Shown piece after piece: positions 30,325-34,327 of a DNA stretch of 64,000 bases. The translations under genes and the position numbers were made by a program. Under the pieces are notes generated by a model. That model ran no database searches. It saw nothing but the letters and a program-made list of their open reading frames with translations, and had not been told where the DNA came from. Position 1 is the stretch's first letter. Each line of letters begins with the position of its first letter. The stretch lies in sequence record MT995927.1; one strand, written 5' to 3'.

Positions 30325-30356
30325 CATATTGCCTCCCCTAGGGGAGGCTTTATGCT
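30325..30356 (+). terminator. CATA-hairpin-TTATG element
   Basis: GCCTCCCC-TA-GGGGAGGC followed by TTTATG. Confidence 0.75.
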
Positions 30357-30424: not shown

Positions 30425-32341
30425 ATGTCTAATGAACAACAGGTTACAAATAAGAAAAAGATTAAGGGCATTGAAGCCAAACATATTACTTATTGTACTG
30501 ATCAATTTGGTAAGTTTACAGATGCACATTTCGTTAAAGAACGAATTCATTTTGAAGATGGTACAACTGCAAATAATTTAAGGATGTGGGAAAACTACCA
30601 GCGTCCTTTTTGGATTACCGCAAAAGGAATGCGTAACCATAAAGAAAAGAAAGATTACGAATATGAGCGTAACTTAGTTAAATACATGTCAACTCAAATT
30701 GACATGAAACGTAAGATTAGTAAAATCCTAGGTGACTATTCGGCTAGATCTCTTCGTCAACTAGCGCGTAGTCCTTACCTATATGGCAGTGATGTTAGTT
30801 CAACCTGTTATCTGAAGCATGATTATCAAGAACGTTATCCTGGTCTAATCTCTCTAAACACTGTTGCTGGCGGTGACATCGAAACCAACGTTTATGAAGC
30901 TGAGAACGATGGCCAGATTATCTGTATGTCAGTTACACATAAGAACAAAGCTTTCCTAGCCTATTTAAAACGATGGGTTAGTGATATTGAAGATCCAGTG
31001 AAAGAGACATTAGAACAAGCACAAAAAGAAGAGGTATTATCACATCTAATTAAAGAACGTGGTCTAGATATTGAAGTAATGGTTGTTGAAACACCAGTAG
31101 ATATTATTATTGAATGTTTTAAACGACTACATACCTGGAAACCAGATTTCTTCGCATTCTGGAATATTAGCTTCGACATTGGTAGAATCTTAAAAACATT
31201 AGAACACTATGGTGTTAATCCAGCTGATGTTTTTTCTGATCCATCGGTACCTAAGAATTATAGGTATTTCCATTTTAAGATTGATGAACCTATGACCACC
31301 ACTGCATCTGGGGTCACTAAATCTAAAGGACCGGAGGATCAATGGCATTGGATTACAGCACCCTCTAGTTTTCAATGTATCGATTCTATGTCAACTTATC
31401 GAGTAACTCGATTAGCTAAAGGACGTGATCCTAACTATCGGTTAGAGTCTATTCTTAGAAAAGAACTAAACATCGATAAATCCACGACCATTAAAAATGA
31501 TAAGGACTTAGAAGATTTTATTGAAGGTTTTAATAAACAACTAGTTGACCGACCAGGCGGCGTTATTACTAAATATATTAAAAATGTAGGTAGTAATGAA
31601 TGGGTACCGGTGGATGATTTTATATTAAATGATAACTTTACCTATGGTGATTCTATTAGATATGTAATGGAATTTGGTAAGTTAACCTTTAAAGAAACTG
31701 CACATCTTGGTGGTATCGATTGGCACCGTGAGATGCAGACTAAGCATAAAATCAAATATGGTCTTTATAACATCATCGACTCCATTCGACTAGAACAACT
31801 TGATGAACAAGTAAATGACCTTGGTCGCTCTATAAGTCTATTCTCTAAGGCATCTGACTATAAGAACTTTAGTTCTAACCCAAAACGACTATGTGACGAT
31901 ATGCACTTCTGGTATTTGAATAGACCAGAGCCATGTGTCATTGGTTCAAGTTCAGATCAGATGGTGCATGAACTTGATCAATATGTTATTGGCCATAATG
32001 ATTGGATTGTTACACTACCATCATACATGGCAGGTCCAAATGGATTGCAGTGTGTTAAAGATTTACCGAATTATAAAACCTTAATCTTCTGTCATATCGC
32101 CGACCTTGACATCGTGTCGACATATCCTAACGTTAGTCAGATTCTAAATATTGCACGTGAAACATGTGTGATGGAATTCTCAATGATGGAAGGAATTAGT
32201 GAACACCATCGCCGTGAAGTTGGCGTAAACTTAACAGGTGGTAGGGTTAATGCTATTGAAATCACACAGAAGATCATGGGTGCTCCTAAAATGGACACCC
32301 TGCTAGAGAAGTTTATTAATACCTATAAGAACCCAAAGTAA
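30425..32341 (+). CDS. Split family-B DNA polymerase subunit: 3'-5' exonuclease plus motif A (gp82-like)
   Basis: ExoI GDIETN, ExoII WNISFDIGRI, ExoIII YNIID, PolB motif A DIVSTYPN; motifs B and C are absent. Confidence 0.8.
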   Translation: MSNEQQVTNKKKIKGIEAKHITYCTDQFGKFTDAHFVKERIHFEDGTTANNLRMWENYQRPFWITAKGMRNHKEKKDYEYERNLVKYMSTQIDMKRKISKILGDYSARSLRQLARSPYLYGSDVSSTCYLKHDYQERYPGLISLNTVAGGDIETNVYEAENDGQIICMSVTHKNKAFLAYLKRWVSDIEDPVKETLEQAQKEEVLSHLIKERGLDIEVMVVETPVDIIIECFKRLHTWKPDFFAFWNISFDIGRILKTLEHYGVNPADVFSDPSVPKNYRYFHFKIDEPMTTTASGVTKSKGPEDQWHWITAPSSFQCIDSMSTYRVTRLAKGRDPNYRLESILRKELNIDKSTTIKNDKDLEDFIEGFNKQLVDRPGGVITKYIKNVGSNEWVPVDDFILNDNFTYGDSIRYVMEFGKLTFKETAHLGGIDWHREMQTKHKIKYGLYNIIDSIRLEQLDEQVNDLGRSISLFSKASDYKNFSSNPKRLCDDMHFWYLNRPEPCVIGSSSDQMVHELDQYVIGHNDWIVTLPSYMAGPNGLQCVKDLPNYKTLIFCHIADLDIVSTYPNVSQILNIARETCVMEFSMMEGISEHHRREVGVNLTGGRVNAIEITQKIMGAPKMDTLLEKFINTYKNPK

Positions 32342-32709
32342 TATATCAGTGGAAGCGCCGAGGAGGATATGAATGTTCATCTGTTGGTGACAAAAGATTC
32401 TCGGCTCTTTACGCAAGGCTTCCTGATGGCAGAACAATTGAGGAAGCTTGGCAGTTAGATTGTAAAGGATATCGCATATACTCCAACCATTGGAAAGCTG
32501 GTAAAGGAAAACCACCACTAGACGGGTATAATCCCAAATATGATGATTATAAAAATCTGTGGAAAGTATGGGCGGTATCTAATAAACATCTAATGGATGA
32601 ATTGCGTCAGAATGCAAAAGAACATGATAACTATCTTTCTGATGTTTTTGCTTCTACTGATATTTCACAGGCACGTGCTCTAGCAGAACTACTTAATGAA
32701 GGATATTAA
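32341..32709 (+). CDS. Hidden 122-codon gene, NADAR-like phage protein, with no canonical start (ATA overlapping the upstream TAA)
   Basis: Hand translation IYQWKRRGGYECSSVGDKRFSALYARLPDGRTIEEAWQLDCKGY...SQARALAELLNEGY; fills an otherwise empty gap. Confidence 0.65.
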   Translation: MYQWKRRGGYECSSVGDKRFSALYARLPDGRTIEEAWQLDCKGYRIYSNHWKAGKGKPPLDGYNPKYDDYKNLWKVWAVSNKHLMDELRQNAKEHDNYLSDVFASTDISQARALAELLNEGY

Positions 32710-32777: not shown

Positions 32778-32812
32778 CATAAAACCCTCCCATTACGGGA
32801 GGGTTTATTTCG
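32778..32812. terminator. Bidirectional terminator
   Basis: AAACCCTCCC-ATTAC-GGGAGGGTTT between convergent genes. Confidence 0.8.
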
Positions 32813-34327
32813 TTAACTAATTTGGTATTTTAAATTCTGATTACCGTTTAGAACATAAATCTTACCGTCATTATTAAACGTATTGGCAAAACCTGCATCC
32901 ACTAAACCAGTTTCTAAATTACCTAAATTTATCCATCGTGCTAATCGTGGTTCATAATACTTAATTGGTGCGTTATTTTGATTTTCACCAGCGATTACAT
33001 AAAGTTCACCAGATGGGCGTATATTAATAGCTGCACCAAGAGGTATACCTGTAGTTATTGGTTTGGACCAATTATTGTTGGTTTGATTGTACGATATGAT
33101 TCCAGTATTAACACCAGCACCAACCGTACCACCAATAACGCATACGCTATTATTATAAATACTCACTGAATAATCTTGGGTATATTCCCCAGTATCATTA
33201 AATGCTGCACCACTGGTATATGTATCTGTAGTTGGATTGTACATTAATGTAAATCCACGATTATTTGTCGCAGTTGTATCAGCTGCACCTAATATGTAGA
33301 TTAACCCATTAAGACTAGTTCCACGTGCATACCGGCAAGCTATCGTGCCTGGTGATTTTATTTCCCATGTATTAGTTGCAGGATCATAACACTGCATATC
33401 TTTAGTAAGTACACCATCTGTGGCACTTTCACCACCATAGAAATATACTTTACCATTAAATGCAACAGCCGAGCATTGTTTAACTGCTATAGGCGTACCA
33501 GTTGGTTGTAATGTTGTTAACTTACCCGTGACTAAATTCAGTGTACGTAGAGCAGTATTAGCATTATTCTTACCACCGTAATAATAGACTAAGTTACCTA
33601 TTTGGGCACCTGCTGCCATTTCGTTATCAGTTTCAAAATCAGTAAGTTTAATAACATTATCTTTAACGAATGGATATGTACCACTAGCATAAACCACTGG
33701 ACGCCAACCTTGGGTTGCAGCACCCGTTTCACTACTTGACGAGCTAGTTATATCAATCGCATAGTAGCCACGATAGAGCTGGTCATTAACTGGATCACTA
33801 CCTGGGTCTCTTCCCCAGTTAGTAGTACCATCAGTGCTAATACCACCAGCGACCGCTTGGTTAATACCTAAGTCATTATCTGTAAATTTATAAGGCCAGT
33901 TAGCACCATTTAAATTAGATACGTGAACATTATAAAGTAACCTTTGCCATTCTGATGTGGCACCAGCCATTGTTAATAAACCAAATTTATAAATGTTCCC
34001 CATAAATCTAACTTCATAGTCACCATTACGGAGTCCGGCATTATTAAGCCGTGATTTTTGTATTGATTTACGAGCTGGTTTCTTTGGTATGTAACAAGTA
34101 ACATTTTTATTAGAGAACTTTAACCATGGTTGTCCATCATTGATTACTGTTCCAAATGTCATATTAACTAATTTAGCTGCATCATCATAACCAAATAATT
34201 CTGAAGATGTTGTTTCACCATACAAACCTAATTCCCTTGTCCCAGCTATCAGTGTTTTAGGACCTGGATAAGGATCGGAATATATAGGCGTATTTGTTAG
34301 TCCAGAAGACAACAATAACTCAAACAT
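32813..34327 (-). CDS. Virion-type protein with an N-terminal phiKZ tail/baseplate paralog domain and a six-bladed Kelch propeller (gp83-like)
   Basis: N-terminal PGP..L..G...G.YG...WLKF...YIPKKP; blades VYYYGG, VYFYGG, IYILG, VCVIGG, LYVIAG, IYVLNG. Confidence 0.65.
   Translation of the reverse strand: MFELLLSSGLTNTPIYSDPYPGPKTLIAGTRELGLYGETTSSELFGYDDAAKLVNMTFGTVINDGQPWLKFSNKNVTCYIPKKPARKSIQKSRLNNAGLRNGDYEVRFMGNIYKFGLLTMAGATSEWQRLLYNVHVSNLNGANWPYKFTDNDLGINQAVAGGISTDGTTNWGRDPGSDPVNDQLYRGYYAIDITSSSSSETGAATQGWRPVVYASGTYPFVKDNVIKLTDFETDNEMAAGAQIGNLVYYYGGKNNANTALRTLNLVTGKLTTLQPTGTPIAVKQCSAVAFNGKVYFYGGESATDGVLTKDMQCYDPATNTWEIKSPGTIACRYARGTSLNGLIYILGAADTTATNNRGFTLMYNPTTDTYTSGAAFNDTGEYTQDYSVSIYNNSVCVIGGTVGAGVNTGIISYNQTNNNWSKPITTGIPLGAAINIRPSGELYVIAGENQNNAPIKYYEPRLARWINLGNLETGLVDAGFANTFNNDGKIYVLNGNQNLKYQIS

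What the first reader, a model, noticed from the sequence alone, without database searches (positions are those of the whole stretch)
32341..32709. Hidden NADAR-like gene lacking a canonical start codon downstream of the polymerase gene
Seen: the apparent gap after the gp82-like gene holds a 122-codon open frame with protein-like sequence. The first ATG is at codon 85 and there is no GTG/TTG before the conserved block. The only plausible start is ATA at 32341, overlapping the upstream TAA (TA-ATA), mirroring the TAATG coupling used elsewhere in the window. Inference: FSALYARLPDGRTIEEAWQLDCKG aligns by eye with the NADAR signature (LSNFY...dG...svEhyyQa.K), and the C-terminal LW..WA..N..L...L / SQARALAELL resembles the NADAR helical end. 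It is either an AUA-initiated, translationally coupled gene or a recent start-loss pseudogene.
Basis: partly seen in the sequence, partly recalled or inferred. Interest (0 to 1): 0.72.

Follow-up and report, generated by a model that had tools for sequence, protein, structure and literature searches.

The report
Frameshift extension of phage DNA polymerase
The "start-less" gene after the polymerase gene of this phiKZ-like jumbo phage is most likely neither AUA-initiated nor dead: ribosomes probably slip back one base on a slippery CCCAAAG at the end of the polymerase gene and add it as a 123-residue tail, possibly NADAR-like, on part of the polymerase.

Summary
Window 32341-32709 is a 122-codon open frame with no ATG/GTG/TTG before codon 85. 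It is a conserved protein domain (phrog_9995 E=1.6e-55; more than 500 homologues; dN/dS 0.13-0.21).

The frame is the -1 frame of the upstream DNA polymerase N-subunit gene (phiKZ gp82 homologue, 30425-32341). That gene ends C_CCA_AAG_TAA, a classic bacterial -1 slippery heptamer.

- In 12 distinct relatives the domain sits in the -1 frame behind exactly one in-phase X_XXA_AAG heptamer (CCCAAAG, GGGAAAG or AAAAAAG). Most have no start codon.
- Across 8182 polymerase codons only one such heptamer lies anywhere else.
- Other relatives join the two parts through an in-frame TAG or a true in-frame fusion. Psa21 and D6 instead have their own TTG/GTG start, a +1 frame and no heptamer.
- Five polymerase genes without the domain have no heptamer.

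Best reading: programmed -1 frameshifting makes a 761-aa gp82-domain fusion beside the 638-aa gp82. I found no paper describing this.

NADAR membership is not shown. Pfam, PDB-sequence and hhalign tests fail. Sub-threshold fold matches (TM 0.44-0.59), collinear motifs and the fusion partners (DUF4326, SLOG) all point towards NADAR.

The parts
30425..32341 (+). Zero-frame gene: DNA polymerase N-subunit (phiKZ gp82 / DNAP-N homologue), 638 aa, stop TAA at 32339-32341
   Evidence: ORF list. phrog_3011 'DNA polymerase' E=1.1e-241. 100% identical to PA7/SL2 and annotated as DNA polymerase in several records. Basu et al. [quoted passage not shown]
32332..32338 (+). Slippery heptamer C_CCA_AAG, in phase with the polymerase frame (CCA = 32333-32335, AAG = 32336-32338) and directly followed by the zero-frame stop
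   Evidence: Sequence. It is the only in-phase X_XXA_AAG within the last 40 codons of any ORF of 150 codons or more on either strand of the window. It is conserved, or replaced by GGGAAAG or AAAAAAG, in 12 distinct relatives. C_CCA_AAG, G_GGA_AAG and A_AAA_AAG are highly shift-prone in E. coli (Atkins et al. 2016, PMC5009743).
32338..32709 (+). -1 frame extension: GTA (Val) at 32338-32340, then the flagged 122 codons from ATA at 32341, stop TAA at 32707-32709. This adds 123 residues to gp82, giving a predicted 761-aa trans-frame product.
   Evidence: Translation. -1 extension of 123 codons. phrog_9995 E=1.6e-55. AlphaFold2 model with mean pLDDT 96.9. Purifying selection.
32369..32458 (+). 29-codon ATG ORF in the +1 frame, called as a gene in some public phiKZ-clade annotations; most likely an annotation artefact
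   Evidence: Annotated in KEN19 and ANB1. The GGAGG in front of it simply encodes the conserved R-G-G of the domain. The ATG is absent in PhiPA3, which has TACGAATG at this place.
32593..32709 (+). 38-codon ATG ORF (PHIKZ082.1 in RefSeq phiKZ): the C-terminal third of the domain, annotated on its own because the frameshift is not recognised
   Evidence: phrog_33573 covers only residues 85-122.
32782..32806 (+). Terminator-like hairpin closing the unit. Its partner hairpin at 30331-30348 lies upstream of the polymerase gene. There is no + strand terminator between the polymerase gene and the extension.

Best explanation
The flagged frame is not an independent gene in this phage. It is the -1-frame C-terminal extension of the DNA polymerase N-subunit gene (gp82 homologue).

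Proposed mechanism (inferred): most ribosomes read ...AAC CCA AAG and stop at TAA (32339-32341), giving the 638-aa subunit. A fraction slip back one base on C_CCA_AAG, with tRNA-Pro re-pairing to CCC and tRNA-Lys to AAA. These ribosomes continue with GTA ATA TAT CAG TGG ... and add a 123-residue globular domain, giving a 761-aa isoform. The neighbouring stop codon may help by pausing the ribosome; no conserved RNA stimulator was found.

Shown here: the heptamer, the frame relation, and their co-conservation and co-absence across relatives; purifying selection on frames that have no start codon; natural in-frame fusions. Inferred: the slip itself and its frequency.

Function (inference, about 50-60%): the domain is a small, divergent NADAR-like hydrolase of ribose-base (ADP-ribose-type) linkages. 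Tethered to the replicative polymerase, it could clear such adducts from template DNA, for example those left by DarT-type defence.
For: 1. The frame is -1 relative to the polymerase gene, with an in-phase C_CCA_AAG as the last two sense codons.
2. Of 17 IMG/VR loci with a gp82 homologue upstream, 14 (12 distinct) have the domain in the -1 frame and exactly one in-phase X_XXA_AAG in the overlap: CCCAAAG x6, GGGAAAG x1, AAAAAAG x7 loci. PS119XW adds CCCAAAG+TGA.
3. The base before CCA/GGA always matches, although it is the third base of different codons (Asn, Pro, Val, Ala, Ser, Leu). That indicates selection at the nucleotide level.
4. Control: in 8182 polymerase codons there are 13 such heptamers, 12 at the junction and 1 elsewhere. 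Five chimalliviruses without the domain have none in the last 50 codons. gp82 is the only such case in the 64-kb window.
5. Ten of the 12 distinct IMG/VR lineages have no ATG/GTG/TTG in the domain frame. In L034 and L053/55 the zero-frame stop lies 70-76 nt past the heptamer, inside the domain, so restarting after termination cannot deliver the conserved N-terminus.
6. dN/dS is 0.13-0.21 between start-less lineages. Against PhiPA3 there are 49 synonymous and 15 replacement codon differences.
7. Other relatives reach the same product by other routes: true in-frame fusions (P0221/L096, P0148/L097) and a single in-frame TAG (L066/67, L083). Where the domain is in the +1 frame (Psa21, D6) it has its own TTG/GTG start and no heptamer.
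8. These three heptamers are the highly shift-prone ones in E. coli (PMC5009743).

Function: AF2 model with pLDDT 96.9. NADARs are the only non-family matches with TM 0.44-0.59. E34, Q38, K42 and D101 are invariant in 114 sequences and line up with the NADAR Glu/Gln/Lys helix and acidic residue in a forced but collinear alignment. Fusion partners are DUF4326 x18, SLOG x8, RNase H x3, an AlkB-like domain and a PIF1-type helicase, the partner set reported for NADAR and Macro domains (PMC9503650).
Against: There is no direct evidence of the trans-frame protein. I found no proteomic, Ribo-seq or western data, and the 2026 structural study of phiKZ gp82-gp50 does not mention an extended isoform.

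No conserved stimulatory RNA structure or upstream SD-like element was found (z=-0.56 for the window), so the efficiency could be low.

PhiPA3, 201phi2-1, Viktualia and PS119XW have a canonical start at or next to codon 1 as well as the heptamer. Psa21 and D6 clearly express the domain as a separate protein. The free domain is therefore functional, and some independent initiation cannot be excluded.

For the function, every formal test of NADAR homology failed to reach significance (Foldseek E>0.1).
Confidence: 0.8

Rival explanations
1. AUA-initiated, translationally coupled separate gene. Ribosomes that terminate at TAA restart on the overlapping AUA and make a free 122-aa protein.
For: TA-ATA overlap. 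TAATG coupling exists in PhiPA3 at this very site and elsewhere in the window. The free domain is the common form outside chimalliviruses, and also in Psa21 and D6.
Against: The aligned codon is ACA, ACT, GTT or GTA in four related start-less lineages and has no counterpart in the AAAAAAG lineages. In L016, L017, L043, L052, L034 and L053 the polymerase stop lies 31-76 nt downstream of the heptamer, so stop/start overlap is not conserved. This reading does not explain why an in-phase slippery heptamer is kept at the nucleotide level. From general knowledge, AUA is a very poor bacterial initiator.
Confidence: 0.07
2. Recent start-loss pseudogene. ATG mutated to ATA in the phiKZ lineage and the frame is no longer translated.
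For: PhiPA3, the nearest outgroup, has ATG where phiKZ has ATA. The phiKZ clade is so uniform (98-100% identity) that decay might not yet be visible.
Against: All 24 invariant and 22 near-invariant family positions are retained. There is no indel or stop in 47 genomes. The phiKZ-PhiPA3 divergence is overwhelmingly synonymous. Many other lineages lack a start yet evolve under dN/dS 0.13-0.21, so lack of a start does not mean lack of translation in this group.
Confidence: 0.03
3. Transcriptional slippage rather than ribosomal slippage. The phage RNA polymerase adds or drops an A in the A-run, producing an mRNA subpopulation in which the two frames are fused.
For: Half of the lineages use AAAAAAG, which has six A's. 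The outcome (a fusion protein) and the comparative signal would look the same.
Against: The window and six other lineages have only three A's (CCCAAAG, GGGAAAG). Productive bacterial RNA polymerase slippage is documented at runs of about nine (PMC5009743). The constraint is on the X_XXA_AAG pattern in phase with the codons, including the matching base before CCA/GGA. That is a ribosomal requirement, not a polymerase one.
Confidence: 0.04

Closest known systems
E. coli dnaX tau/gamma programmed -1 frameshift (A_AAA_AAG)
   Same: A -1 slip on an X_XXA_AAG heptamer inside a replicative-polymerase gene, giving two isoforms of one replisome subunit from one mRNA. The same heptamer is used in half of the relatives found here (PMC5009743).
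   Different: In dnaX the shift truncates the protein (gamma) and depends on an upstream SD-like element and a downstream stem-loop. Here the shift extends the protein by a whole folded domain, the site sits at the very end of the gene beside the stop codon, and no conserved stimulator was found.
Phage tail assembly chaperone G/GT frameshift (lambda G_GGA_AAG) and T7 capsid 10A/10B
   Same: A phage gene pair in which the downstream ORF has no start of its own and is made only as a C-terminal extension by a -1 slip near the 3' end of the upstream ORF. The arrangement is conserved across distant phages while the heptamer type varies.
   Different: Those are virion-assembly proteins. This is a replication enzyme, and the added module looks enzymatic. 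In relatives, in-frame fusion, in-frame TAG and separate-gene states all coexist.
Bacillus subtilis cdd (-1 shift at CGA_AAG next to the stop codon)
   Same: A_AAG-type -1 slip at the last sense codons, directly before the zero-frame stop, giving a C-terminally extended enzyme (PMC5009743).
   Different: The cdd extension is short and described there as incidental. Here the extension is a conserved 123-residue domain under purifying selection.
NADAR superfamily (Pfam PF08719: E. coli YbiA; DarT1-associated antitoxins; T4-like phage AdfN)
   Same: Small alpha+beta domain. Collinear motifs: FS-x-F/L, DG, E-x3-Q-x2-3-K helix, G-K/R-x-K/R-x-P-L, acidic residue before the last helix, N-x-L/A-x-x-I-L. 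NADARs are the only non-family fold matches with TM 0.44-0.59. Same fusion partners, DUF4326 and SLOG. Known phage NADARs remove DarT1 ADP-ribose from DNA (PMC11825919 abstract; PMC13309987).
   Different: About 40 residues shorter than YbiA. No Pfam, PDB-sequence or hhalign significance. Lys is one residue further from Glu than in NADAR. The NADAR D-x-x-W pyrophosphate motif has no clear counterpart. Activity is untested.
PhiKZ AdfM (gp104 macrodomain, anti-DarT2)
   Same: A chimallivirus enzyme acting inside the phage nucleus to strip ADP-ribose from phage DNA (PMC13309987). It would be the functional counterpart if the extension is NADAR-like.
   Different: Unrelated fold. AdfM is a free protein imported on its own and is experimentally proven. 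The present domain is unproven and delivered as part of the polymerase.

Membership tests
Programmed -1 ribosomal frameshift cassette (dnaX / phage G-GT type) | Shift-prone heptamer X_XXY_YYZ in phase with the upstream (zero) frame | tested here: met
   C_CCA_AAG at 32332-32338, with CCA and AAG as the last two sense codons of the polymerase gene. The heptamer type is listed as highly shift-prone in E. coli.
Programmed -1 ribosomal frameshift cassette (dnaX / phage G-GT type) | -1 frame open from the heptamer through a long extension | tested here: met
   123 sense codons from 32338 to the TAA at 32707-32709. The same holds in all 14 -1-frame loci and in PS119XW.
Programmed -1 ribosomal frameshift cassette (dnaX / phage G-GT type) | Heptamer conserved or swapped for another slippery heptamer in relatives, rare elsewhere, and absent where there is no extension | tested here: met
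   CCCAAAG, GGGAAAG or AAAAAAG in 12 distinct lineages. 12 of 13 occurrences in 8182 polymerase codons are at the junction. None in five domain-less relatives, nor in Psa21 and D6, where the domain has its own start.
Programmed -1 ribosomal frameshift cassette (dnaX / phage G-GT type) | Extension under purifying selection although it lacks its own start codon | tested here: met
   No ATG/GTG/TTG in 10 of the 12 distinct IMG/VR lineages. dN/dS 0.13-0.21. 49 synonymous against 15 replacement codon differences to PhiPA3.
Programmed -1 ribosomal frameshift cassette (dnaX / phage G-GT type) | Stimulatory element (downstream hairpin or pseudoknot, or upstream SD-like sequence) | tested here: inconclusive
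   Window fold z=-0.56. Consensus structure of 7 relatives -2.8 kcal/mol with no covariation. Per-locus hairpins are inconsistent, z from +0.2 to -4. The adjacent stop codon is the only shared candidate in the CCCAAAG/GGGAAAG group.
Programmed -1 ribosomal frameshift cassette (dnaX / phage G-GT type) | Trans-frame protein actually produced | not testable with these tools
   No proteomic or Ribo-seq data within reach. Literature searches found no report.
NADAR superfamily (PF08719) | Match to the Pfam NADAR model | tested here: not met
   No PF08719 hit at E<=10 for the window protein or any of 70 relatives. Bona fide YbiA relatives all carry PF08719.
NADAR superfamily (PF08719) | Significant sequence or profile similarity to known NADARs | tested here: not met
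   The PDB profile search finds no NADAR chain. hhalign probability is 0.12% against YbiA-type sequences and 0.15% against a profile widened with 8 phage NADARs.
NADAR superfamily (PF08719) | NADAR fold (helical core flanked by two small beta-sheets) | tested here: inconclusive
   Model pLDDT 96.9, four helices plus short strands. Best TM in PDB is NADAR 8bau, TMq 0.44, E=4.3. In BFVD, NADARs reach TMq 0.45-0.55 with probability at most 0.51 and E>=0.45.
NADAR superfamily (PF08719) | Catalytic Glu and Lys on one helix plus a Glu/Asp before the C-terminal helix (Schuller et al. 2023) | tested here: inconclusive
   E34, Q38, K42 and D101 are invariant in 114 sequences. They align to the NADAR Glu/Gln/Lys and an acidic position only in a forced alignment, and the Lys is offset by one residue.
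NADAR superfamily (PF08719) | Hydrolysis of ADP-ribose-base or ribosyl N-glycosidic bonds | not testable with these tools
   Needs an enzyme assay.
PHROG phrog_9995 (unknown function) | Full-length match to the family profile | tested here: met
   E=1.6e-55, residues 2-122 on profile positions 2-123 of 124.
Non-AUG (AUA) initiated, translationally coupled gene | A start-competent codon conserved at the initiation site, next to the upstream stop, in relatives | tested here: not met
   ACA, ACT, GTT or GTA at that codon in L009, L011, L012 and Phabio. In the AAAAAAG lineages there is no counterpart, and the stop lies 31-76 nt downstream of the heptamer.
Pseudogene | Frame disruptions, loss of conserved residues, relaxed dN/dS | tested here: not met

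The most novel reading that the evidence does not exclude
Nucleus-forming jumbo phages use recoding (-1 frameshift, or TAG readthrough in some lineages) to put a fixed fraction of a NADAR-like de-ADP-ribosylase or N-glycosidase directly on the replicative DNA polymerase. The replisome would then carry its own eraser of DarT1-type base adducts into the phage nucleus and clear the template as it copies. This would be a counter-defence built into a polymerase isoform that the structural work published so far does not include.
Probability: 0.3. Interest if true: 0.85.

Novelty: new member of a known kind. Interest (0 to 1): 0.7.

Why it matters
phiKZ is the reference model for nucleus-forming jumbo phages and a phage-therapy relative. 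Its split DNA polymerase was reconstituted and solved only in 2026, using the 638-aa gp82. If a 761-aa isoform exists, the replisome has an extra, probably enzymatic, module that current structures, interaction maps and annotations miss.

Some 47 phiKZ-clade genomes, and several others, leave this frame unannotated or cut it into spurious mini-ORFs.

The case also shows one two-module protein being assembled in five ways among relatives: a separate gene, stop/start overlap, -1 frameshift on three different heptamers, an in-frame TAG, and a true fusion.

It gives a direct, cheap test of whether a widespread uncharacterised phage domain (more than 800 cluster representatives, often in giant multi-domain proteins) is a divergent NADAR acting on DNA.

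Tried and rejected
- Pfam on the window protein and on 70 relatives: no NADAR, only noise.
- PDB sequence profile search: only weak uL3 noise.
- hhalign against a YbiA-type NADAR alignment, and against one widened with eight phage NADARs, in local, global and greedy modes: not significant.
- Foldseek against PDB: nothing with E<=0.001.
- Search for a frameshift-stimulating RNA structure: single-sequence fold, consensus fold of seven relatives, and per-locus folds with shuffles. Nothing conserved.
- Literature: PHIKZ082.1/gp82.1 gave no paper. phiKZ plus frameshift or slippery gave nothing relevant. The 2026 gp82 structure paper and the 2021 and 2022 comparative-genomics papers on jumbo phages and NAD-ADPr systems do not mention a frameshift. 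No supplements are held for the NADAR survey.
- The ATG at 32369 behind GGAGG was considered as the real start with a nearby indel. Rejected: it is in the +1 frame, is not conserved in PhiPA3, and all 47 genomes agree on the sequence.
- TAG reassignment in L066 and L083 could not be judged, because only 6 kb of each contig is held.
Full report
**What the window is.** The region is 100% identical to Pseudomonas phages PA7 and SL2 and belongs to the phiKZ clade of nucleus-forming jumbo phages (Phikzvirus). 47 public genomes match at 90-100% over 1.2 kb.

The gene ending at 32341 is the homologue of phiKZ gp82 (phrog_3011 'DNA polymerase', E=1.1e-241). A 2026 preprint shows that gp82 is the N-terminal subunit of a split B-family replicative polymerase. 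[quoted passage not shown] Its partners are gp50 and the RNase H-clamp protein gp155.

**The observation.**
- TAA at 32339-32341 and ATA at 32341-32343.
- 122 sense codons to TAA at 32707-32709, with the first ATG/GTG/TTG of that frame at 32593, codon 85.
- A real protein domain: phrog_9995 matches end to end (E=1.6e-55).
- More than 500 homologues of about 122-130 aa, with 24 invariant and 22 near-invariant columns, all retained in the window.
- An exhaustive profile search finds 867 cluster representatives, many of them inside multi-domain or giant proteins.

Public annotations either leave the region empty or call two mini-ORFs. One is a 29-codon ATG ORF in another frame at 32369-32458. The other is the 38-codon tail at 32593-32709, which is PHIKZ082.1.

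**The start codon is not what is conserved.** At the codon aligned with ATA:
- PhiPA3 has ATG (TAATG overlap).
- 201phi2-1 and Viktualia have GTG.
- L009 has ACA, L011 has ACT, L012 has GTT and Phabio has GTA.
- A second group of relatives (L016, L017, L034, L043, Noxifer, L053/55) has nothing start-like anywhere in the open part of the frame.

These start-less frames still evolve under strong purifying selection, with dN/dS of 0.13-0.21 for L009/L011, L017/L043, L017/L052 and L043/L052. The window and PhiPA3 differ at 49 codons synonymously and at only 15 by replacement. The frame is therefore translated, and not from a start codon of its own.

**What is conserved is a -1 slippery site.** The flagged frame is the -1 frame of the polymerase gene. 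That gene ends AAC CCA AAG TAA, which is the heptamer C_CCA_AAG (32332-32338) followed by the stop.

tblastn finds a gp82 homologue directly upstream of the domain in 17 IMG/VR loci.
- In 14 of them (12 distinct sequences) the domain is in the -1 frame, and there is exactly one in-phase X_XXA_AAG heptamer in the short stretch where both frames are open.
- The heptamer is CCCAAAG in the window, PhiPA3, L009, 201phi2-1, L011 and Phabio. It is GGGAAAG in L012. It is AAAAAAG in L016, L017, L034, L043, Noxifer and L053/55. PS119XW has CCCAAAG followed by TGA.
- The base in front of CCA or GGA always matches, although it is the wobble base of codons for six different amino acids. The constraint is therefore on the RNA, not on the polymerase C-terminus.

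Controls:
- Over the 12 polymerase ORFs (8182 codons) there are 13 in-phase X_XXA_AAG heptamers. Twelve are at the junction and one is elsewhere.
- Five chimalliviruses whose polymerase gene is not followed by the domain (EL, Xoo-sp14, Phobos, SPFM16, Kodama) have no in-phase XXXYYYZ in the last 50 codons.
- In the whole 64-kb window, gp82 is the only ORF of 150 codons or more with such a heptamer near its end, and it is followed by a 123-codon -1 extension.
- In L034 and L053/55 the zero-frame stop lies 70-76 nt beyond the heptamer, inside the domain's coding region. Termination-reinitiation cannot explain expression there.

[quoted passage not shown] This is linked to a single tRNA-Lys reading both AAA and AAG (Atkins et al. 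2016). Whether P. aeruginosa shares that tRNA set was not tested here.

**Independent routes to the same product.**
- Two relatives encode the polymerase C-terminus and the domain in one uninterrupted ORF. P0221 is 698 aa, a gp82-like protein with the domain at 559-678 (L096 3001-5097). P0148 is the polymerase C-terminal segment plus the domain (L097 3001-3711).
- Two further distinct relatives (L066/67 and L083) have the domain in the same frame as the polymerase, separated by a single TAG.
- Psa21 and D6 have the domain in the +1 frame with its own TTG or GTG at codon 1. It overlaps the polymerase 3' end by 29 nt, and there is no heptamer.

The perfect sorting is the strongest argument that the window's arrangement is a programmed -1 ribosomal frameshift. 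Heptamer goes with the -1 frame. A start codon goes with another frame. TAG goes with the same frame.

The predicted products are the 638-aa gp82 and a 761-aa gp82-Val-domain fusion. All 47 phiKZ-clade genomes are 98.6-100% identical over the junction, and phiKZ itself keeps the heptamer. Terminator-like hairpins lie at 30331-30348 and 32782-32806, with none between them on the + strand. The polymerase gene and the extension thus appear to share one transcription unit.

**What remains open about the mechanism.**
- I found no conserved stimulator. The 109 nt from the heptamer fold no better than shuffles (z=-0.56). Seven relatives share no structure. Per-locus hairpins are inconsistent.
- In the CCCAAAG/GGGAAAG group the stop codon right after the heptamer is the only shared candidate for a pause signal (inference).
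- Transcriptional slippage cannot be excluded for the A6 lineages, but it is unlikely with three A's.
- PhiPA3, 201phi2-1, Viktualia and PS119XW combine a heptamer with a canonical start, so they may make both the free and the fused domain.
- No paper that I could search reports a frameshift in a chimallivirus polymerase gene.

**What the domain is.** The AlphaFold2 model is very confident: pLDDT 96.9, four helices and short strands.

Formal tests for NADAR fail:
- No PF08719 hit for any of 71 members at E<=10.
- No NADAR chain in a PDB profile search.
- hhalign probability of 0.1-0.15% against YbiA-type and phage NADAR profiles.
- No Foldseek hit at E<=0.001 outside the family.

Three weaker lines nonetheless converge on NADAR:
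1. Fold matches. The only PDB match with a non-trivial TM-score is the Phytophthora NADAR 8bau (TMq 0.44). The sub-threshold BFVD list is dominated by annotated NADARs (TMq 0.45-0.55) and DUF4326 proteins. It also contains a protein named 'swarming motility protein', the name some sources give YbiA (TMq 0.47), and unnamed segments of large viral proteins (TMq up to 0.59).
2. Motifs. E34, Q38, K42 and D101 are invariant across 114 diverse members. The NADAR catalytic set is a Glu and a Lys on one helix plus a Glu/Asp further on (Schuller et al. 2023).
3. Fusion partners. Among 79 multi-domain representatives the partners are DUF4326 (18), SLOG families YAcAr and cpYpsA (8), RNase H (3), DUF488-N3a (2), and one each of an AlkB-like dioxygenase, guanylate kinase, a PIF1/RecD-type helicase and DprA. 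This is the partner set described for NADAR, Macro and SLOG domains in viral NAD/ADP-ribose systems (PMC9503650; PMC7824862).

I rate a distant NADAR relationship at roughly 50-60%. Membership is not demonstrated.

**A working model (inference).** PhiKZ DNA is ADP-ribosylated by DarT2 inside the phage nucleus. The phage counters this with the macrodomain AdfM. T4-like phages use a NADAR (AdfN) against DarT1 (PMC13309987; PMC11825919 abstract). A NADAR-like hydrolase carried on a fraction of polymerase molecules would reach the nucleus and the fork automatically. It could remove base adducts from the template. This is testable with standard phage-host assays.

**Verdict.** Both readings of the missing start are replaced by a better-supported one, programmed -1 frameshifting (confidence about 0.8). 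The NADAR idea stays a plausible lead. The mechanism is of a well-known kind. Its use to append a domain to a jumbo-phage replicative polymerase appears to be undescribed.

Noticed in passing
L008:2411-2716 (PhiPA3, HQ630627); L066:2232-2607: The PhiPA3 homologue of gp82 is interrupted by a group I intron (Rfam RF00028, 71.7 bits, E=1e-16) immediately after the catalytic DxD motif. GenBank annotates gp085 only up to the intron, so the 3' exon (about 76 codons, carrying the slippery site) is unannotated. A metagenomic relative has an intron-like insert at the same site (48.8 bits, just under the gathering score).
   Followed up: partly
window 32369-32458 and 32593-32709 (+): Public phiKZ-clade records call a 29-aa ORF (behind a GGAGG that merely encodes Arg-Gly-Gly of the domain) and a 38-aa ORF (PHIKZ082.1). 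Both look like by-products of not recognising the frameshift.
   Followed up: yes
L066/L067 about 2995 and L083 about 2980: In two distinct metagenomic chimalliviruses (three loci) the polymerase and the domain are in the same frame, separated by one TAG (TAG-CTA, TAG-CTG). The domain itself ends with TAA, and L083's polymerase ORF holds no other TAG. Readthrough, a suppressor tRNA or TAG recoding could not be told apart with 6 kb of contig.
   Followed up: partly
L099 (Psa21) and L100 (D6), about 1270-1310: Here the domain is in the +1 frame with its own TTG (Psa21) or GTG (D6) start at codon 1. It overlaps the polymerase 3' end by 29 nt and there is no heptamer. The GenBank records annotate only an N-terminally truncated version starting at an internal ATG.
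   Followed up: yes
L097:1550-3711: In this NCBI metagenome contig the gp82 homologue is split into a 482-aa ORF and, 2 nt later in another frame, a 236-aa ORF holding the polymerase C-terminus fused in frame to the domain. Whether that break is an intron remnant, another recoding site or an assembly error was not examined.
   Followed up: no
window 32813-34327 (-): The convergent neighbour (gp83 homologue, annotated as a virion structural or head protein) carries Kelch repeats (PF24681 E=1.9e-16, PF13964 E=3e-15).
   Followed up: no
   Followed up: partly
P0134, P0153, P0164, P0198, P0222 and others: The domain occurs inside giant proteins of 2000-6000 aa, which look like phage or conjugative-element 'polyvalent' proteins, at varying positions. 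It is fused to DUF4326 in 18 of 79 mid-sized representatives. The architecture of the giant proteins was not analysed.
   Followed up: partly
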